Below are positions 28,382 through 37,624 of a stretch of 58,244 bases of DNA, piece by piece. Each line of letters begins with the position of its first letter. Position 1 is the stretch's first letter. Origin of the DNA: Pocillopora damicornis (Eukaryota); assembly GCF_003704095.1 (NCBI RefSeq), contig NW_020844169.1, positions 310,001 through 368,244 of the forward strand, given 5' to 3'. A model generated the notes under the pieces. That model ran no database searches. It was not told the origin of the DNA and saw nothing but the letters and a program-made list of their open reading frames with translations. The translations under genes and the position numbers were made by a program.

Positions 28382-31300
28382 TCAATGCTTCTTTTTGTTG
28401 TCCACCATATTGCCATCTGTATGGTTTGCGTCAGGCCTCTCATCCTCTGGACCTGACAGTTCATCATCACTACGTGTGTCTTTTTCCACCTAACAAAATT
28501 AAGAAAGCAAGAATAAGGAAAGAAAAGAAAACTTTACTGACTTGTACACTGCAAGGCAAACATACGTTGTCATGCCACATCCTTATTTCTTACACCTACA
28601 AATTTGAATCAATAACAAAAAGAAAACTAATAGGGCATCCACGATCAAGAACCACAACCACAAAAATTCGAATGGTATTCTCCTTCAACTGGCCTCACTA
28701 GAGGCAACTAGAATATTTTTGGGCCTATCCCTCTCTCCCTTTGGCCTGATTCAGTTTGGCCCATCCTCAATTCCCTTGGAAGTTATGATCTTCATTGACA
28801 TCAACCCCCACCCCCCTCCACCCTGACTTGGCACAAAAAGATTTATTACTCACCGTTCCCTTAATCAAAAACTGCATGGCCACCTCAGCAACTTTATATG
28901 ACCAAATAACATGTAGAACCTGAACATAGTGATCAAAATAAAAAGACAAAAGAACTTTTAGAGTGACAACAATTTGAAGGGTTGTTGCATGTATCACATA
29001 TTGAGATCTCAAGGAAGGTTTAAGTAGGTAACTCATGCTCATTTTCACACAGAATTTTCTCAAAATTTATACAGAATACATAATATTCTAAATTATCCTG
29101 CTGGCTTAAAAGAGCTGAAACCATTCTGCCAACCTTTTGGTTATCTGGGGCAAGCAGATTGTTGAACTAAACAAGTAACTTTCTTTGCTTACTTCACCAT
29201 TTGGCAAAACTCATACATGGCATGGTTCAATTAATTTTAAAAGCACAAATTGGAGTTCACATTGCTCGAGCCCTGGGCCAGGTCACAAGTTTAGCTGTCA
29301 AACTTCTCACTTGGGGCATGTAAACAATGGATTTAGCAGTACCTGCAGACATGACAACAAACCAAAGAACCATGACCATGCTTTAAAAGGACCCACATAC
29401 TCTTGACAGTGGTATACAACATGCAAAACCCTGTTTGAGTAAAGAAATACATTTGTGTTGTAAAATGTTGGGGTCAATTTTTAAATAAAATACCTACGCT
29501 GTCTGTCAGTCATTTGGCAAGTCCCTAGTTTGTTTAGTCAGTCAGATGGTTTGTCAATCAATCAGTGAGTCATGAAAATCATTCAGCAATTAATTTAGTC
29601 AAATGCACAGTCCATCATTGTGGGTTAATGTGGTCTCTCAATGTCGGAATCCTTCAACTCCTGAACAATTCTCCCCTTTCCAGCAATACATTACCTTTGC
29701 CTATTTTTTATTCTAATAATAAACACCCTTTACTTGATAAGTTTGTCTTTTCCTATCACCTCTCCACCATTACAATTGTAAGGGGACAGCAAACTTACCA
29801 GAATGGATAATAAACCAGCCTTGTAACATTGAATATCACAGCAAATAACACAAATATTAAGTTAGTTGTAGCTTCCCACTTGGCGTAATTAAACACTTTT
29901 GCTGACTGCAACAAAAACAAAAAAAAAACCCAGAATCAACAGTCACAGAATAAAATCTTTCAAACCAAAACCAATAACCCCTAACCCCCAAGATCTGATT
30001 GTTAGTTCTCACCTCTAGCTGCTACAAATTTCTTTGCAAATTAGTAAAGAGAAATTTGTGTTGGATCAAGATATCAATTTCTACCTGATATGTTTGAGTA
30101 TTCTCATTACCTGTTTGCCAGATAATTCACAGATATTATAGGGAGTGGTTACATGTTAATCACTTATAGGAGTTGAAGGGTTAAAGGAGAGTTATGCTCC
30201 AGATAATGATCATTATTATAGCGGAGCTCGCAGAGCATATCCTCATAATCATACAAAATAGTAGTAACCCAATCAAGCCGAAAAAATTTGGATGTACAAT
30301 TGTATGACTGTATGACCTTACAACTCTACAACCGTATGACCATACAAGGTGCTACTTTTAACATGCTTGGTCAACTGTACCACGGCACGCCAATGCCACG
30401 GCTTTGTCCAGTAGTCCAGTGGTCAGTGCACTGGGCTCCAAGACAGACGACCCGGGTTCTAGTCCTGGCCAGGGCAAGGCGTTGTGCAAGCTCCACTCTT
30501 AGGCTTGGCTAAATCTATATATTACATTCAACTCACTATCTCTTTTCTGATTGGCTGCAAGTCGACAGTGAATTTTCAAAATCAGCACCTAGGACGTCAT
30601 CTAGCTGCAGATTATATAATAATCACACCAAGGGCACTTAAGGTCATGGGTAATCATGTCATGTATGACCAGGATACATGATTTCTAAGGGTAATCATGT
30701 TGAGGTCATGCGCATTGTGTTGCTAACTGATTTGTATATTTTTACACATTAGGAAATTAATTACCTGTTCTTCTTACTGTCATGTTCATTTTTTTTGCTC
30801 AATGTATAACAAAACAATTATAAGATTTAGTTTTTGTGATATCCAGAAAAATCAAGGCCTTGGTAAGGGTTATCAGCCTCAGCCTCAGCCTTCCACTAAA
30901 GCTGATAACCCCTGCCTCAACCTTGATTATTCTGGATATCACAAAACCCTCATCCACTTATTGTTCATTAATAATGATATTTATTACTAACAACAATGAT
31001 TTTCTGTAGTAATTGTTAGTCAGAGCAGTCATTTGTGCACTTTTCTTGCTTCAATTTGTTCTGCCATTTGGCAAGTTTGACTAGTGTGCTAAGTTGTTTT
31101 ACAAATGCAAACTTGCATTTCAGTGATAGAGATAAAAGTTATATATGGTTTGTTCATCCCTTTACACCCTAACATCAGTATACATATTCTCCATACTGTT
31201 CTCCATACATTTCCTAAGGTGCTGACAAGGAGAATTTGTTGAACAATCAAGAGCTTCTTTAGTTGGTGATCATTTCCTTTATTCTTGTGACCTTAACGTG

Positions 31301-34300
31301 ATTCAAGGGTGATATTGTGAGGAAAATATTAGATGCTAGTCGCTCTTAGGGGGCAAAGGGTTATCATACTCCTCCACAAAATTTAAAATGAAAATGTCAG
31401 TAAGTTTTTGGTTGAAATGCTAAAAAAAGTGAAAAAAAGGCTTTTAATAATATTCCTCTCCCTCCTTATTTAGCATGAAGACTCACCTCCAGAAAAATAT
31501 CAGCCAAGTCATGCAAAAGCATTATCACGCTACCGATACGAAAGAAACCACTTGAGTATGAACATACTGTCAACATGATTGTAACTACATGGTGGATAGC
31601 CATTTGCCAAAAATCCTGAAAACAGAAAATTTTGGTTTGATTTTAAACAAAAATTAGGCATTTTTCTAATTATTTTGAATATGGAGACATTGCATCAGGG
31701 AACAGAAATAATGACTCCCTGATCTTCATCTAATTACCCTTAAACTTATCTCTTGACTTAATTAAGTTTCCTTTACCTGGTATTTAAAAAAGTAATCAAT
31801 CAATTAGAAAAACTTTTTTGGGTGACTTAGATTTCTTAATTAAATCTTATCATAAGTTACTCAATCCATCAGTAAATGAGTTCCTCCCATGTGCTCCTAT
31901 AACAGAAAGTTAAAAATTAAGAATGATAATTTTCAGAATACCACTTTGATCAGTACCAACTTCAGAGCTGCCCTCTTTTTTGTGTGCAAGTTACAACTTC
32001 ATACTTTGATGATGGAATCAATTTTCATCTCCATTTATGGCTAATAGAATCCACATTATAAACTGATTTGTAGTTTGAAGATTTTGGAGTTAGCAGAATG
32101 AAGCAATCATTAGCCTTGTACACTTGTGCATGCTTTGCTGATGACATGTTATCAACAACATGTGTTTGTGGCACAGGTTGCATGTAATTATACAACAAAA
32201 TATCAAAAGCTTCTTTGACGACTTTCCTTTCACTCAAAAGGGAACAGTTTTCTTGTATCTCTGTCACAAAGCACATTGTTTTGCATTTAATTTTTTCTAG
32301 TTTCAGCCTTAATTTAGAAGGAAATGAACAACAACAAGAAACAAAAGTCATAATGAATGAACCACTGCTTCCTTAGGCCACCAGTATATCAAAAAATACT
32401 TCATTCTTGGAAATGCAAATTAAGATAAAAATGTGGTGCTGTTAACTTCAAATAGTAAGTTTAATGATAAATTTGTGATCAGAAAACATAAAAGTTACAA
32501 ACCTTTCTTTTGACATCCACAAAAAATGAAACGAGAAGGGACATGTAGAAGGCTATTTCAACCACATAATAGAAAAATATTGCATCTGTAAGAGGCTGGA
32601 AAAAAAAGAGAGAAACCAGGAGTCAGTTGGAGACAACATGGATGAATCTACATGGTTAATAACTATCTCAAATTTACAAATGAATGAATGAATGATTTTC
32701 AAGTAGTTTTGCGTTACTAAAGTAATGCATCTGGAGAATATGATAATACAGAATAAACTAGTTGAAACTCAATGCGACCAACAATTAATTTGTTTACTGT
32801 AACACATGCACTGCTATACAAATTATGTTCTAGTTATGAGTTGTGCTGACAGATTTTCAAAAATATTTCATTTGCTATGGGACAAAGAAGTGATAATGTT
32901 CCCTTCATTTAATCACCCATTTTTTTCCAAATATTTCCAATCTTACTTTACAGTTCTTTTGTACAATACATAAAATGTCTAACCTGTTCTCCAAAACCAA
33001 CAAAACAGAGTCGCAGATCCCAAAGCCAAGGTTCCTGAAAATTTGAACATCTCAAAACTTTTTATTAATGCCACAACCTAATTATCTTCGGTTTTTTTTT
33101 CTTAAAATATCATCCAGGTCACCTCTGAAAAAATCTTGAAATGGTTATTTTTTCAAAAAAAAAATTAAGCTTCTATTAGAGAATGAGTTGCTCAAATATG
33201 TTGAAAACCATATGTTAAAATAAAATTACCTTGTATAATATAACTATCCCATAAATGGATGTCGCCAAATAGAACAAAAATCTCCAACTACAAAATAAAT
33301 GAAAAGATGAAAGAGTGTGCTGCCTAAAACAAGAATACATTTGACAGTCAGCCAGCCACTGATAGTCCTGGAATAGAACTAACCCAGAGGTTAACTTTAA
33401 TCAAGGTTTGGTTATTCTTTTGCTCAAAAGCCTTCTGTCAGAAAATTTTCTGTATTCTTTTTAAGGCATCTAATCATTAAATTGCAGACAAAGAGAATTA
33501 TACTGAATTTTTTTCAAGCTTTCAGATCTTCACACTAATCCTGGGTTATCCTAACCAAGCTTTGAACAACCCAGCCCTGGGTGGAAAGAGACACTGTGTG
33601 AATTAAGTATCAAGCCAAGGAACACAACACAATAGCTCAATCAGGTCTTGAGCTTAGACACCTCAAGTTCAGAGCACTAACTGTCATGCTACCATAGTCA
33701 CTAGATTTTGTAGCTTTAAGATTTTAAACCACTATTCTAAAACTCTAAGAGCACCTGTATAGTTTTGCTGTCTACATCCTGCAGATTCATAGAGATCACA
33801 ACTTCAAGTCCTGTCTCAGCCATGAATTCTTTGATTTAAAGTTTATTTTGGTCCAAAACAACAGTTCCCAGACTCATGGCACAACTAAGAAATAAAATGA
33901 CAGAGATCAAAATATTACACACCTGCTTTCAGTAGCCTTCCTCATAATGGATGGTTTTGATTGCTGTCGGCGATTTTTGAACCATCTTTTCACTTCACGT
34001 GGAGTCCAGCCAAGTTGTTTTGACAGTCCCTCTACTCGTTCAGCGTTAGGGCATTTGCTGATTGTTTGGTAAACCTTCTCACAAAATGTATTTTCTACAA
34101 AAACTATAGGTTCTTCTGTTACACCAAGGTAGCCTGCCAAAGGTGTTGCAATGAATCTAAAGAGCAGAGAAGGAAACCCAGCAATAAGGAAATCAGATGA
34201 AGAGAAAACAGGAACTGGTTCAAATAAAGTAATGTTTGTTCATTGGATAAATGAACCAACCTTCTGATGAAAGTGAAGACAAAGAATTTTTATGCATGAG

Positions 34301-37300
34301 CCTAACTAATTTAGTGTGCAGACCAAGAGCTAATTTCTAAGAGTACTTAATCTTGTGCACCATATAAAATCAGCTGGATTCACACCTCCAAAAATTCAAT
34401 TTTGTGTGTCTGTAACATCAATTCCCCTCTTGTTTTGGCTCTCTCAATGCAACTCATCCAATAAATAATCTGATCATAGCATATAATGAAAAGCTGGAGC
34501 AAAAATATCAGACATTTTTTGAAAATGGGGATCAATAATATTACAAATAGAATAAGAAAGAGGGTAAGTTTTGAGCTTGGTAAGGAAAAGGAAAAATATA
34601 TTCATGGTCTTGTCATAAGCATTAGACAAAGAAAGAATTCTAAGTCCCCATAAGGAATTGAACCTCACACCTTCAGATTCCGTGCTCCAATGCCCTACCA
34701 TTGAGCCACAGAGACTCTATGGTAAGCAAGGCCCAACATGAACTTCATATGTGACACGTATTCTGCAAACTGCTGGGATCAGCAATGTCCTTAGCATTAT
34801 GTTTATAAATAGAATATGAAAGATGGTAACTTTTGAACCTCACACCTTCAGATTCCGTGCTCCGATGCTCTACCACTGAGCCACAGAGACTCTACGGTAA
34901 ACAAGGCCCAACATGAAGTTCATATGTGACACACACTTTTGAACCACAGACCTTCATGGGGACTCCAAAGTTTTTCTTTATCTCATGCTCATGACAAAAC
35001 AAAAAACATTTTTATTTATCTATATCTATATCCTCTTGGGTAGTGTACACCGGAGGGTTATTTTTAATCTCTTCTATACCCTCTTAGGTAGTGTATACCT
35101 GAGGGTTATTTTTAATCTCTTGCATACCCTCTTGGGTAGTGTATACCTATATCTAATCAACACAGCTTCTGGACTTTAAAAGTTAAAGACCATGACCTGT
35201 ATAAAGAAGCAATTTCTTTTTCTTTCCCAATAAAAAAGTGTTAACTGATCCACTAGATCTGGCATTCTTTAACATCATTTTTTAAAAAGTTATTCATAAA
35301 ATTTAGGTCAGTTAGCCAATCCATGAAGGTGACAGAAACATTTGAAATAGTTGTCAAAATTTAGTGGCCACTCCATAAATACATACAAAGCAAACCAGTA
35401 CGACCAAATTTAAACAAAAAAATTAACTGCTTGATTTTAAAGTAAACCTATGAAGCTTACTGCTAAGTTTGGAGATATTCCTGTAGAGTCCTAGCCAAAC
35501 AAAGAAAAATTTGATAACAAAAGTAACCTCAAAAAACAACAAAAAAAAACAACAAAAAAAAAAATTACCATGTAAAATGAGGATGCATGAAATACTACAT
35601 TTGCCATTAGAGTGTTTGCTCTGCTCCACCTTAATAATGAAATTTCAACTACTATCAATAACACATCTGCTTGGAGGGTAAATAAATGCAAAAAGCTTTG
35701 GACAGCTGAGAGCTAGCATATATCTATATGTATTTGCCAAAATATACATAAAGCTTTTTAAGTCAGAGTGTTGTTTACACAACTGCAAAAAAATCATGAA
35801 GAAGCCCTTCACTATTACCAGATGAAGTTTGGTTTAGGCAAATAATTATCAAATGAATATGTTTGCCACTATAAAATCACAATCTTTTGTGAAAACTGAT
35901 TTTTTTTCAAAAATAATAATTAATAAGAGAAACTACCAAGCTTTATATTCATAGTCCTTTCTGGGAATTACCCTCTGACAGCTTAACACCTTGGAAGTGA
36001 TTAAAATGTAACTTCTCCATGTAATATCCATACATTATCCAGCAAACAGGTAATGAGAATACTCAAACTTATCAGGTAGAAGTTGTTATCTCAATCTAGC
36101 ACCAAATTCTCCTAACTAATTTATAAGGAAATGTGTGGTAGATGGAAGGGAGAATTGACAATCAGATCTTGGGAGTTAGAGTTAAGGAAGCAATCTCCCA
36201 ATGGAAAAGAAGAAAAATGCATTGAATGGTAGTGAAAGTTGGTTGAGAGAACATAGCGTCAGCATCAACAAACTTATGCTGCTTTACTGTCCACATAAAC
36301 AACAAAAAAAGATATTATAAAATATCTACTCAGAAGACACCTATACAAAAATATGTTTAGTTTACACTTACTGGTGGACAGATGTCATAAATGGCTTAAT
36401 ATATATGAAGACCTGTAACTAATATAAATAAAAAAAACCTGGAAATGGATTCAGATTTTGAAGTTATTGCTCAGCAATTATCTATTTATCAGATCTCACT
36501 GCATGATATCCAACATAAAGAAAAATGAACTCAACAGGGAACTCTTCAAGGTTTTTCTAGCTTATCGCTGAAAATAAATACTTTTAGCAACCAGAAAACG
36601 ATTGAACATGTTTGTCAAAAGAACGTATTGTTAATGTCCAGAGTAGTTCTCGACAAATGACATGCAAATCAGATCGGCTACGCTTTTTGTGGGAGAAAGA
36701 ACGGACCACTTAGTACAGCTACACAAAAATAGAACAGGTGTTTCCAAAGCAATGAATGTTATTAATTTTTTGGATACAAAACGAAATCATGTAAATTTCA
36801 TGCTTCTCATGTATAGGTCACACCTAGAGTTTAAAGCTTTGGTTTGACATTTTGTCTCAGTGGTTGTCAGAAACGTGCGGTTAATGTTAAATTTTGATAC
36901 AATAGGACGAAGAGGCCTTTAAACGTGGTTTGTTGGGGTCAATAGAATTTTGCTGAAGAAAAATTCACCACGGAGGGTGGTAACATCCGGAATAAAACGA
37001 AAAATCAGATGAACTACGACCTCATCTATACTTCACGTTGAAATGTTGACGTTTGACTGGATTTGTAAATAAATAAATATCAAATTCTTACATTAATGAA
37101 TTGACGGGAAATAAATTCATGCTCACGATATTAAATCGCCACCTCCTTAAAATTTTCCGGACGAATTTACTTTTACTACATTTGTAAAATCCAATGATCA
37201 CAGTCTACCTTGGAGAAAATACTGTCCCGCGCGTGCTTATCTCATCTGCTTGGACAAGTTAAGTTTTCAAAGCAAAATCGCATTGGATCACAATGATAAA

Positions 37301-37624
37301 CACTGCCAAACGAAATGTGAATTTTCATTCTCAGAAGTCTTGGTTAAAGACAGAACACGTCACACAAAAATAAAGCCGAGGTGTGAACCAAAATCTAACA
37401 CAACAACTATACGATCAAAGAGTGTGTAGTCCATCAACTAACCTCTCGAAGAGAAATCGTAGAGCGATCAACACCACAGCAAAGGGAAAGCATAGAAAAA
37501 GCTCGCCATTTTGGACCCACTTATGCTTTTTCGCTTCCTCTAAGCTCTCCCAAGTGGAATATTCTGGTAACCAGAAATTTCTGTCCCAAAACCACGCTCT
37601 CAGGCTCAGCAGCTGATCCGCCAT
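28382..37624 (-). CDS. CERS: Ceramide synthase with homeodomain (CERS2-6/Schlank type), 371 aa, 10 coding exons
   Basis: Exons 37443-37624, 33923-34156, 33230-33287, 32984-33034, 32503-32595, 31487-31615, 29799-29905, 29343-29430, 28854-28919, 28382-28489. Motifs: FWDRNFWLP N-terminus, homeodomain (WFKNRR), Lag1p motif RKDFWQMAIHH...LLHDLADIFLESAK, C-terminal DTRSDDE and a KKKH-stop dilysine ER-retrieval signal. Confidence 0.93.
29975..30184 (+). mobile_element. piggyBac-like MITE, subfamily B
   Basis: Homologous to 1776-1986; ends in GAAGGGTTAA. Confidence 0.75.
30215..30525 (+). repeat. Dispersed repeat containing a tRNA-like module
   Basis: A-box-like TAGTCCAGTGG (~30412) and B-box-like GGTTCTAGTCC (~30455). 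Confidence 0.45.
30835..30946. repeat. Fold-back palindromic repeat
   Basis: TGTGATATCCAGAAAAATCAAGG...GGGTTATCAGC / GCTGATAACCC...CCTTGATTATTCTGGATATCACA. Confidence 0.6.
31153..31364 (-). mobile_element. piggyBac-like MITE, subfamily A
   Basis: Reverse complement of the 15738-15950 family; CCCTTTACACCCTAAC...GGCAAAGGGTTA. Confidence 0.75.
33578..33695 (-). repeat. Decayed SINE-like fragment (related copy at ~43443-43530)
   Basis: GGGTGGAAAGAGACACTGTGTGAATTAAGTATC...ACACAAT shared with GGGTAGAGAGAGGCATGGTGAGAG...ACACAAT at 43.45 kb. Confidence 0.35.
34545..35020 (-). repeat. tRNA-derived repeat, two tandem heads plus an inverted fragment
   Basis: Minus strand reads TGTGGCTCAGTGGTAGAGCATCGGAGCACGGAATCTGAAGGTGTGAGGTTC (A box, anticodon-like stem, B box) at ~34650-34712 and ~34835-34890; an opposite-orientation tail begins ATGGGGACTCC at ~34956. 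Confidence 0.65.
35028..35150. repeat. ~47-bp tandem repeat x2.5
   Basis: CCTCTT(G/A)GGTAGTGTA(C/T)ACC(G/T)GAGGGTTATTTTTAATCTCTT repeated. Confidence 0.8.
35983..36185 (-). mobile_element. piggyBac-like MITE, subfamily B
   Basis: TTAA...CAGATCTTGGGAGTTAGAGTTAA; reverse complement of the 1776 family. Confidence 0.7.

What the first reader, a model, noticed from the sequence alone, without database searches (positions are those of the whole stretch)
33923..34156. Ceramide synthase homeodomain keeps a canonical K50/N51 DNA-recognition helix
Seen: exon 2 encodes LSKQLGWTPREVKR-WFKNRR-QQ (WFKNRR at 33967-33984). Established: Asn51 is the near-invariant base-contacting residue, and Lys50 defines the Bicoid/Otx/Pitx TAATCC-binding class. 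As I recall them, human CERS2-6 read WFR[RSHQ]RR and lack Asn51, and Drosophila Schlank has been reported to regulate transcription through its homeodomain. Inference: this enzyme may retain ancestral sequence-specific DNA binding and act as a membrane-tethered lipid-sensing regulator. Caveat: the basic N-terminal arm of a typical homeodomain is absent.
Basis: partly seen in the sequence, partly recalled or inferred. Interest (0 to 1): 0.75.

Follow-up and report, generated by a model that had tools for sequence, protein, structure and literature searches.

The report
Coral ceramide synthase Hox-like domain
This exon encodes the homeodomain-like part of an ordinary, expressed and already annotated coral ceramide synthase; its textbook-looking Lys50/Asn51 pair arose within stony corals at the most changeable site of that helix and was lost again in Acropora and Montipora, so it is probably not an inherited DNA-reading device.

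Summary
Observation confirmed. Window 33923-34156 (minus strand) is exon 2 of a 10-exon ceramide synthase gene, Pocillopora damicornis pdam_00011665 / XP_027036885.1. It encodes a truncated homeodomain (Pfam PF00046, E 2e-9) whose helix 3 reads WFKNRR at 33984-33967. RNA contigs from 4 runs of 4 studies carry the exon with the predicted splice joints.

The reading is only partly supported. K50/N51 is not a one-species quirk: 9 of 15 named stony-coral species have it (Pocillopora x3, Stylophora, Desmophyllum, Porites x4). It is not ancestral on present sampling. Sea anemones read WFRHRR, the hydrozoan Clytia reads WFRKRR, and N51 occurs in only 2 of 173 distinct non-coral CerS homeodomains. Parsimony on a protein tree puts both changes on the stony-coral stem. 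Acropora (4 species) then replaced N51 by Ser and Montipora (2 species) by Thr.

Position 51 is the most variable helix-3 site in the family (11 states). Position 50 is nearly always basic, so K50 is a conservative R-to-K swap. In a published simulation of human CerS6 the equivalent Arg118 contacts a CoA-mimicking ligand group. The N-terminal arm, Tyr25, Arg31 and a hydrophobic residue 47 are missing.

DNA binding is untested. Interest is low to moderate.

The parts
33923..34156 (-). Exon 2 of the ceramide synthase gene. It encodes the whole Hox-like domain and the linker to TM2 (residues 62-138 of XP_027036885.1).
   Evidence: Translation. Pfam PF00046 E 2e-9. GT-AG limits and phases. RNA contigs of 4 runs with joints on both sides.
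33967..33984 (-). Helix-3 core W48-F49-K50-N51-R52-R53. K50 is AAA at 33978-33976 and N51 is AAT at 33975-33973.
   Evidence: Sequence read directly. Homeodomain numbering from the Pfam match and the alignments to the CerS6/LASS5/LASS6 structures.
37443..37624 (-). Exon 1: start codon, luminal N-terminus and TM1 (MADQLL...FLFER).
   Evidence: tblastn of the Pocillopora RefSeq proteins P0243 and P0375. Donor GT. RNA joint 34156|37443.
33230..33287 (-). Exon 3: start of the TLC domain / TM2.
   Evidence: RNA joints 33287|33923 and 33033|33229 in 4 of 4 runs.
32984..33034 (-). Exon 4.
   Evidence: RNA joints in 4 of 4 runs.
32503..32595 (-). Exon 5.
   Evidence: RNA joint 32595|32984 in 4 of 4 runs.
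31487..31615 (-). Exon 6: Lag1p motif with the catalytic His-His and Asp..Asp (IHHVV...LHDLADIFLE).
   Evidence: Own-genome PF03798 match at window 31421-31621, 53 bits.. H214, H215, D242 and D245 are invariant in alignment A2.
29799..29905 (-). Exon 7 (TLC domain).
   Evidence: PF03798 match, 25.1 bits.. One other GT-AG pair 4 bases off also fits the arithmetic; I chose the pair that fits P0243.
29343..29430 (-). Exon 8 (TLC domain).
28854..28919 (-). Exon 9 (end of the TLC domain).
28382..28489 (-). Exon 10: acidic C-terminal tail and the stop codon.
   Evidence: translation ends ...NKKKH*.

Best explanation
The exon encodes the Hox-like domain of the single homeodomain-bearing ceramide synthase of Pocillopora damicornis. 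This is a CerS5/6-like, multi-pass ER-membrane sphingoid-base N-acyltransferase with an intact Lag1p motif. Family-wide, helix 3 carries a fixed scaffold W48-F49-[R/K]50-x51-R52-R53. Its basic side chains most likely serve the enzyme, at the cytosolic mouth of the acyl-CoA cavity, and in some animals also serve nuclear import or chromatin association. On the stony-coral stem R50 became K, which keeps the charge, and the free site 51 became N. Asn is one of at least 13 residues seen at that site across the family (11 outside stony corals, plus Ser and Thr in Acropora and Montipora). Acroporidae later changed it again. The match to a canonical K50/N51 recognition helix is therefore most likely incidental. 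It is not a retained, and probably not a selected, DNA-reading surface. Shown: gene model, expression, domain identity, taxon distribution, site variability. Inferred: the role of the basic residues and the neutrality of N51.
For: Gene and expression: 10 GT-AG exons match the P. damicornis protein P0375 at 100% inside the exon limits. P0375's contig length of 368,244 equals the end coordinate of the window's contig. RNA joints are seen in 4 runs. This is the only CerS-type homeodomain exon in the genome: 1 match among 14 candidates. Distribution by named species: K/N in 9, K/S in 4 (Acropora) and K/T in 2 (Montipora) of 15 scleractinians. Nematostella and Actinia have R/H and Clytia has R/K. 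Among 173 distinct non-scleractinian CerS homeodomains, HD50 is R in 161 and K in 7. HD51 has 11 states (entropy 2.15 bits, the highest between HD48 and HD58), with N in only 2. W48 is 173/173, R52 166/173 and R53 167/173. In the tree, Scleractinia is sister to Actiniaria (support 99/98) and that pair is sister to the Clytia clade (100/96). Fitch gives 4 steps for HD50 and 14 for HD51 over 28 rows, with K and N arising at the scleractinian node. The Actinia-Porites differences are not concentrated in helix 3: by my hand count of the rows printed, 4 of 13 positions in helix 3 against 14 of 44 elsewhere. Role of the basic residues: in passages read from PMC11919693, molecular-dynamics simulations show CerS6 Arg118 and Arg121 of the last Hox-like helix contacting the fumonisin tricarballylic group, which the authors take to mimic CoA. 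By the alignment these residues are HD50 and HD53. The essential flanking Lys125/Arg131 align to K and K in the coral. Missing canonical DNA contacts: no basic arm, C/P at HD25-26, V at HD31, R at HD47 (with numbering).
Against: The N51 coral domains are the most canonical-looking of the 10 CerS I scored against Pfam Homeodomain: 33.8 and 36.0 bits, against 24.0-30.0 for the other eight. That includes 28.2 and 28.7 for the Acropora and Montipora-cluster proteins and 24.3 and 25.7 for the anemones. Three stem changes (E/Q46K, R50K, H51N) all move toward the canonical consensus. The Hox-like exon is the best-conserved part of the protein in 8 of 9 pairs and ties with TLC in the ninth (e.g. Pocillopora-Porites 84% against 74% for TLC), so the domain does something important. 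N51 has been kept in 20 of 22 distinct scleractinian-like sequences. Homeodomain-dependent transcriptional effects are published for fly, silkworm and zebrafish CerS. The CerS6 Hox-like domain is flexible, so helix 3 need not stay at the cavity mouth. Neutrality of N51 is inferred from its pattern and not measured: no codon-based test was possible because no coding DNA of other species could be fetched.
Confidence: 0.68

Rival explanations
1. Functional re-canonicalisation. Stony corals re-evolved a working K50/N51 recognition helix, so that their CerS, sitting in the inner nuclear membrane or after release, reads TAATCC-like sites and couples lipid state to transcription more directly than other CerS do.
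For: K50 and N51 together, with W48, F49, R52, R53 and K46, are held in three coral families. These domains have the highest Pfam homeodomain scores among the 10 CerS tested. The Hox-like exon is the most conserved part of the protein. Schlank and Cers2b precedents exist for homeodomain-dependent regulation.
Against: Acropora (S51) and Montipora (T51) dropped N51 while keeping the rest of the domain 76-86% identical. No N-terminal arm, no Tyr25 or Arg31, and Arg instead of Ile/Val at 47. The protein is a seven-helix membrane enzyme. The fly, which has the best evidence for DNA binding, has R50 (Table 1 of PMC4901127), so the canonical pair is not needed for the published effects.
Confidence: 0.1
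2. Ancestral retention. The founding CerS homeodomain had N51 (and perhaps K50). Stony corals kept it, and anemones, hydrozoans and bilaterians lost it independently.
For: The domain must descend from a canonical homeodomain, which would have had N51. N51 turns up sporadically elsewhere: the clam Mya arenaria (WFRNKR) and one wrasse (WFRNRR). Sampling of Octocorallia, other hexacoral orders, Placozoa and sponges is missing here. Passages of PMC6125248 say the history of the class is unresolved.
Against: It needs at least three independent losses (Actiniaria, the Clytia clade, Bilateria) against one gain on the tree (Fitch). The two other N51 cases are nested among R50/H51-type relatives (the wrasse inside fish cers4a). 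R50 is the state in 161 of 173 distinct non-coral sequences.
Confidence: 0.08
3. Schlank-like regulator without any special role for N51. The coral Hox-like domain has a second, nuclear-envelope or chromatin-linked regulatory function that depends on the basic R52/R53 cluster (the fly 'NLS2'), as reported for fly, silkworm and zebrafish. Residues 50/51 are bystanders. This is compatible with the best explanation.
For: R52 and R53 are kept in the coral and in 166-167 of 173 others. The mutations that abolish the transcriptional effects hit this cluster: Schlank R124A, together with R78A, and zebrafish Cers2b RR121-122WS. The Hox-like exon is more conserved than TLC even though it is dispensable for catalysis in mammals (statements in PMC4901127 and PMC11919693).
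Against: There are no data from any cnidarian. The zebrafish authors found the protein at nuclear membranes, not in the nucleoplasm, and favour an indirect mechanism. The same arginines may be conserved for CoA binding.
Confidence: 0.3

Closest known systems
Vertebrate CerS5/CerS6 (CERS-class homeobox genes; structures 8qz6, 1x2m, 2cqx)
   Same: Same architecture: TM1, a truncated Hox-like domain, and a TLC domain with the Lag1p His-His/Asp..Asp motif. Exon 2 aligns end to end with human CerS6 residues 58-134 (E 4.7e-14). The basic flank residues equivalent to CerS6 Lys125/Arg131 are present. Pfam PF00046 plus PF03798 hit the Pocillopora protein.
   Different: Helix 3 reads WFKNRR instead of WFRQRR or WFRHRR. 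HD46 is K, not Q/E. Whole-protein identity to a lizard CerS6 is 44%.
Drosophila Schlank (CerS with homeodomain-dependent transcriptional function)
   Same: A single homeodomain-bearing CerS in the genome, with the basic R52/R53 cluster that in the fly is called NLS2 and is needed for promoter binding.
   Different: The fly has R at HD50 (Table 1 of PMC4901127). No nuclear localisation, ChIP or genetic data exist for any cnidarian CerS. I did not retrieve the fly sequence itself.
K50 paired-like homeodomains (Bicoid, Otx, Pitx, Goosecoid)
   Same: W48, F49, K50, N51, R52 and R53 are identical to this class's recognition-helix core.
   Different: No basic N-terminal arm, no Tyr25 or Arg31, and Arg at 47. 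The domain is embedded between membrane helices. There is no special sequence kinship: Bicoid 1zq3 scores E 0.038 and Engrailed Q50K 2hdd scores E 0.032, against 4.7e-14 for CerS6.
Sea-anemone and hydrozoan CerS (Nematostella, Actinia, Clytia)
   Same: Orthologous genes. They share the cnidarian post-helix motif K-A-[TK]-E-S and have 52-54% (anemones) and 40% (Clytia clade) whole-protein identity.
   Different: WFRHRR and WFRKRR. Their Pfam homeodomain scores are lower: 24.3 and 25.7 bits for the two anemones and 24.0 bits for P0014, an unnamed member of the Clytia clade.

Membership tests
CERS-class (Hox-domain) ceramide synthase | TLC domain (PF03798) with the Lag1p motif: adjacent His-His and downstream Asp..Asp | tested here: met
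   PF03798 hits on window exons 6 and 7 (53 and 25.1 bits). Exon 6 encodes IHHVV...LHDLADIFLE. H214, H215, D242 and D245 are invariant columns in A2. The Pocillopora protein scores PF03798 E 2e-47.
CERS-class (Hox-domain) ceramide synthase | Homeodomain-like segment between TM1 and the TLC domain, truncated at its N-terminus | tested here: met
   PF00046 E 2e-9 covering profile positions 16-56 of 57 only. It lies at residues 87-128, before TLC at 134-324, in P0243.
CERS-class (Hox-domain) ceramide synthase | Two conserved basic residues flanking the end of the Hox-like domain (CerS6 Lys125 and Arg131), essential for activity | tested here: met
   By the alignment they correspond to Lys at exon-2 residues 67 and 73. 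Their essentiality is a literature statement (passages of PMC11919693).
CERS-class (Hox-domain) ceramide synthase | Acyl-CoA-dependent N-acylation of sphingoid bases | not testable with these tools
Activity is inferred from the intact motif and from orthology.
Canonical sequence-specific homeodomain, K50 class | W48, F49, N51 and R53, with Lys at 50 | tested here: met
   WFKNRR at 33984-33967.
Canonical sequence-specific homeodomain, K50 class | Basic N-terminal arm (Arg2/3/5) for minor-groove contact | tested here: not met
   The residues before helix 1 are GYLGVTEEPIVFVEN, with no Arg or Lys. The Pfam match starts at profile position 16.
Canonical sequence-specific homeodomain, K50 class | Backbone and base contacts Tyr25, Arg31 and Ile/Val47 (list recalled from established structures) | tested here: not met
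   By my numbering, HD25-26 is C-P, HD31 is V (R is at HD30) and HD47 is R.
Canonical sequence-specific homeodomain, K50 class | Asn51 held invariant among orthologues | tested here: not met
   S51 in 4 Acropora species and T51 in 2 Montipora species. There are 11 states among 173 distinct non-coral CerS homeodomains.
Canonical sequence-specific homeodomain, K50 class | Sequence-specific DNA binding (TAATCC) | not testable with these tools
   Needs EMSA, PBM or SELEX.
Schlank-type nuclear CerS regulator | Basic helix-3 cluster (fly NLS2) required for promoter binding | tested here: met
   R52 and R53 are present. The requirement itself is shown only in fly and silkworm.
Schlank-type nuclear CerS regulator | Inner-nuclear-membrane or nuclear pool and chromatin occupancy | not testable with these tools
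   No localisation or ChIP data for cnidarians turned up in searches.

The most novel reading that the evidence does not exclude
Stony corals outside the Acroporidae carry the only known ceramide synthase whose homeodomain has regained a complete canonical K50/N51 recognition helix. If so, it gives this membrane enzyme direct, sequence-specific (TAATCC-like) promoter reading at the nuclear envelope, with Acropora and Montipora as natural loss-of-function controls.
Probability: 0.08. Interest if true: 0.7.

Novelty: new variant of a known kind. Interest (0 to 1): 0.3.

Why it matters
Whether CerS homeodomains touch DNA is an open and debated question. [quoted passage not shown] Stony corals supply a natural series for testing it: N51 in Pocillopora and Porites, S51 in Acropora, T51 in Montipora, and R50/H51 in anemones. 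These sit on an otherwise highly conserved domain, so one could ask whether Asn51 makes any difference. My evidence predicts that it does not. If that holds, the practical lesson is that a canonical-looking WF[KQ]NRR core in a truncated homeodomain is not evidence of DNA reading. A second point is more solid. In anthozoans the 'dispensable' Hox-like exon is conserved as well as or better than the catalytic TLC domain. That argues the domain has a constrained role still to be defined.

Tried and rejected
Gene conversion or exon shuffling from a canonical K50 homeobox gene. Rejected. Outside positions 46/50/51 the exon is plainly CerS-type, with the cnidarian motif K-A-T-E-S-S-W and 60-61% identity to the anemone CerS exon. 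Differences from Actinia are spread evenly: 4 of 13 positions in helix 3 against 14 of 44 elsewhere, by my hand count of the rows. Non-CerS homeodomains score E 1e-4 or worse.

Pseudogene or unexpressed exon. Rejected.

An exon-2-skipping isoform. No such joint was listed in 4 runs. Contigs cannot prove absence.

A second homeodomain CerS paralogue in the genome. None found: 1 match among 14 candidates.

Naming the unnamed exon-level relatives (P0002-P0009, P0013, P0019, P0037, P0038). This failed, so their taxa stay unknown. They are counted only as 'scleractinian-like' (at least 70% identical) or 'other'. Rows with more than 5 gaps in the HD10-66 region were dropped before the counts (266 sequences gave 195 distinct regions). 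My first regex labels mis-picked N-terminal W-L-P strings for 8 of 28 rows. redid the extraction with hmmalign, and all counts given come from those calls.

The word search with the 14-sequence profile was swamped by fish: 120 of 268 hits listed. The search around P0014 found only 4 unnamed or uninformatively named proteins. Invertebrate sampling is therefore thin. There is no octocoral, corallimorph, zoanthid, placozoan, sponge, echinoderm or insect sequence in my set.

Papers. I read passages only, not whole texts, of PMC4901127, PMC2211742, PMC11919693, PMC13294678, PMC6125248, PMC11363265, PMC5650468 and bioRxiv 10.1101/2025.07.24.666377 (for the last, also the abstract and outline). Sociale 2018, Voelzmann 2016, Mesika 2007 and Noyes 2008 were seen only as citations inside these. 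Supplements were closed. The CERS alignment figure of PMC6125248 (supplementary fig. S10) and the Schlank motif figures of PMC11363265 could bear on the residue comparison and on the bound motif.

'Not in print' rests on searches. None returned a paper on cnidarian CerS homeodomain residues.
Full report
WHAT IS THERE. On the minus strand, 34156-33923 is an open 234-base exon bounded by AG and GT. Its translation ends ...LSKQLGWTPREVKRWFKNRRQQSKPSIMRKATES, and WFKNRR is encoded at 33984-33967 as TGG TTC AAA AAT CGC CGA. Pfam calls it a Homeodomain (E 2e-9, 37.5 bits against a cut-off of 22.9), but only over profile positions 16-56 of 57. The N-terminal arm and the start of helix 1 are absent. 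The best solved relatives are human CerS6 (8qz6, E 4.7e-14), LASS6 (1x2m) and LASS5 (2cqx). Their helix 3 reads WFRQRR, WFRQRR and WFRHRR. The observation and its coordinates are correct.

THE GENE. The window is G000:C804:310001-368244 of a 234.35-Mb assembly in 4393 contigs. A protein cluster returned by the tools contains 'hypothetical protein pdam_00011665 / ceramide synthase 5-like [Pocillopora damicornis]', which UniRef names 'Homeobox domain-containing protein'. It lies on a contig of 368,244 bases, exactly the end coordinate of the window's contig. That protein (P0375) matches the window at 100% inside ten exons. Its P. verrucosa orthologue differs at 3 of 371 residues.

The exons, all with GT-AG introns, are 37624-37443, 34156-33923, 33287-33230, 33034-32984, 32595-32503, 31615-31487, 29905-29799, 29430-29343, 28919-28854 and 28489-28382. 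Exon 6 carries the Lag1p His-His and Asp..Asp residues. PF03798 hits exons 6 and 7. The spliced step was left out, and whole-protein work used the database proteins.

Exon 2 is held at 100% of sampled words by 20 public runs, 11 of them on record as RNA. RNA contigs of 4 runs from 4 studies cover it without a differing letter. They show the joints E2-E3, E3-E4 and E4-E5 in 4 of 4 runs. The E1-E2 joint appears in 3 of 4, and the fourth shows the same 3286-base skip placed 3 bases off. It is the only CerS-type homeodomain exon in the genome: 1 match among 14 candidates. The gene is therefore real, expressed, intact and already annotated.

HOW WIDESPREAD IS K50/N51. I searched exon 2 alone against 1.84 billion representatives. 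I also ran word searches seeded with database CerS proteins and opened clusters for names. Helix 3 was extracted by hmmalign.

By named species:
- K50/N51: Pocillopora damicornis, P. verrucosa, P. meandrina, Stylophora pistillata, Desmophyllum pertusum, Porites lutea, P. lobata, P. harrisoni and P. evermanni. That is 9 of 15 named scleractinians, spanning robust and complex corals.
- K50/S51: Acropora digitifera, A. millepora, A. muricata and A. palmata (4 of 15).
- K50/T51: Montipora capricornis and M. foliosa (2 of 15).
- R50/H51: the anemones Nematostella vectensis and Actinia tenebrosa.
- R50/K51: the hydrozoan Clytia hemisphaerica.

Named bilaterians read WFRQRR (Priapulus, a millipede), WFFRRR (Solemya), WFRNKR (Mya), WFRKKR (Ciona) and WFRRKR (Macrostomum). 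The fly is listed with R at position 50 in Table 1 of PMC4901127.

Among 22 distinct scleractinian-like sequences, K50 is 22/22 and N51 is 20/22. Among 173 distinct other CerS homeodomains, HD50 is R in 161, K in 7, H in 3, F in 1 and A in 1. HD51 shows 11 states (H 75, R 49, Q 27, K 10 and others, N 2). W48 is 173/173, R52 166/173 and R53 167/173. Position 51 is thus the least constrained site of helix 3 (entropy 2.15 bits against 0-0.5 for positions 48, 49, 50, 52 and 53). Position 50 is simply 'basic'.

ANCESTRAL OR DERIVED. A maximum-likelihood tree of 28 full-length proteins recovers Scleractinia (support 100/99), with Pocillopora+Desmophyllum set against a Porites/Acropora/Montipora side. 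Scleractinia is sister to Actiniaria (99/98), and both are sister to the Clytia clade (100/96). The tree kept the trait's own columns, 2 of 382.

With the cnidarian clade rooted against the rest, Fitch parsimony needs 4 steps for HD50 and 14 for HD51. It assigns K and N to the scleractinian node and R to the cnidarian node. Retention from an N51 ancestor would need at least three separate losses against one gain.

An unnamed sequence (P0007) shares residues otherwise seen only in the Acropora/Montipora rows (F19, E28, plus Y43 with Montipora) but still has N51. This suggests that Ser and Thr arose separately from Asn. Each is one nucleotide away from AAY.

The scleractinian stem also changed HD46 to Lys. 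Differences from Actinia are no denser in helix 3 (4 of 13 positions) than elsewhere (14 of 44), by my hand count of the rows.

WHAT HELIX 3 PROBABLY DOES. I read passages of the CerS6 cryo-EM paper (PMC11919693). The Hox-like domain is flexible and non-essential for catalysis. In molecular dynamics, Arg118 and Arg121 of its last helix contact the fumonisin tricarballylic group, which the authors take to mimic CoA contacts at the cytosolic mouth of the cavity. By the alignment these residues are HD50 and HD53. The essential Lys125/Arg131 align to two lysines of the coral exon. A basic residue at 50 therefore has an enzyme-side rationale, and R-to-K preserves it.

The same cluster is the fly's 'NLS2'. 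The Schlank NLS2 variant (R78A and R124A) loses promoter binding and repression (PMC11363265; bioRxiv 10.1101/2025.07.24.666377). Zebrafish Cers2b RR121-122WS loses autorepression, although that protein was found at nuclear membranes and the authors favour an indirect mechanism (PMC5650468). All of these proteins lack the K50/N51 pair, so the pair is not required for the published regulatory effects.

FOR A FUNCTION OF THE DOMAIN, BUT NOT OF N51. The Hox-like exon is the best-conserved part of the protein in 8 of 9 pairwise comparisons and ties with TLC in the ninth. Pocillopora-Porites gives 84% against 74% for TLC and 71% overall. Pocillopora-Nematostella gives 60% against 54% and 52%. The N51 domains also score highest against Pfam Homeodomain: 33.8 and 36.0 bits. 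The other eight score 24.0-30.0, including 28.2 and 28.7 for the Acropora and Montipora-cluster proteins and 24.3 and 25.7 for the anemones (10 proteins). These facts keep the bold reading alive.

Against that reading, canonical DNA contacts are missing. There is no basic arm. HD25-26 is Cys-Pro, HD31 is Val and HD47 is Arg (the contact list is recalled from established homeodomain structures). Two coral genera discarded N51 without otherwise degrading the domain (76-86% identity in the core).

COMPARISON AND NOVELTY. The gene is a member of the CERS homeobox class. Every defining sequence feature that I could test is met. It is not a member of the K50 paired-like class. The arm, Tyr25/Arg31, a hydrophobic residue 47 and invariance of N51 among orthologues were all tested and not met. 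Its nearest non-CerS relatives are Engrailed and MATa1 at E 1e-4 or worse, and Bicoid scores E 0.038.

Reviews describe the class as highly divergent and note that its cnidarian history needs study (PMC2211742; PMC6125248). [quoted passage not shown] Five literature searches returned nothing on cnidarian CerS helix-3 residues. The K50/N51 state of non-acroporid stony corals, and its S/T replacement in Acroporidae, therefore appear to be undescribed details of a known family.

LIMITS. No octocoral, corallimorph, zoanthid, antipatharian, placozoan, sponge, echinoderm or insect sequence is in my set. Many relatives are unnamed metagenome fragments. No coding DNA of other species could be fetched, so there is no dN/dS test. 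Supplements were closed. DNA binding was not and could not be tested.

VERDICT. 'Ancestral retention' is not supported, and a DNA-reading role for N51 is unlikely (about 0.1). This is an ordinary orthologue with an interesting but probably incidental two-residue variant. Interest 0.3.

Noticed in passing
window 36010-36190 (intron 1 of the CerS gene): A short interspersed repeat of about 175 bases. The own-genome DNA search gave 4489 first-look candidates. The 40 that were scored are the window's own copy (100%) plus 39 copies at 86-90% identity on many contigs. RNA contigs pile up here to summed depths of thousands, with many loose ends. It looks like a high-copy SINE/MITE-like element transcribed from many loci.
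   Followed up: partly
window 34643-34715, minus strand (intron 1): A tRNA-like sequence (Rfam RF00005, 34 bits against a gathering score of 29, E 8.1e-05). It lies next to two neighbouring ORF fragments, 34474-34701 and 34745-34876, that share the peptide STESEGVRF. These are possibly two copies of a tRNA-derived SINE. RNA contigs cover 34524-35231.
   Followed up: partly
G000:C1708:~721000-724000 (loci L005 and L007): A second multi-exon TLC gene with a Lag1p-like His-His and LHDIADIFLE motif (PF03798 hits of 38.3 and 32.9 bits; tblastn). No CerS-type homeodomain exon was detected anywhere else in the genome. It may be a homeodomain-less CerS1-like paralogue. Other TLC hits lie on C4382 (single 237-aa ORF), C753 and C967.
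   Followed up: partly
proteins P0008, P0011, P0012, P0015 and others (one search hits): The exon-2 search also pulled in long proteins with many tandem homeodomains: 9 stretches in 1335 aa and 12 in 1666 aa. One 560-aa model carries three copies of a CerS6-type Hox-like segment (WFRQRR three times). They are unnamed, and may be assembly or annotation chimeras or true multi-homeobox genes.
   Followed up: no
protein P0131 (Mya arenaria 'CERS5-like'): One of only two non-coral CerS homeodomains with N51 (WFRNKR). The 440-aa model repeats the Hox-like segment twice and continues into unrelated sequence without a TLC domain, so the gene model looks chimeric.
   Followed up: no
window 33260-33711 (intron 2): Low-depth RNA-library contigs (depth 5-9) in 3 of 4 runs run through intron 2. 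They show 7-9 differing letters and a 3-base insertion behind 33355. This could be unspliced transcript, contaminating DNA or another haplotype. No exon-2-skipping joint was listed.
   Followed up: no
whole gene, window 28382-37624: In anthozoan comparisons the Hox-like exon is more conserved than the catalytic TLC domain, e.g. 84% against 74% for Pocillopora-Porites and 79% against 73% for Nematostella-Actinia. This holds although the domain is reported as dispensable for catalysis in mammals.
   Followed up: yes
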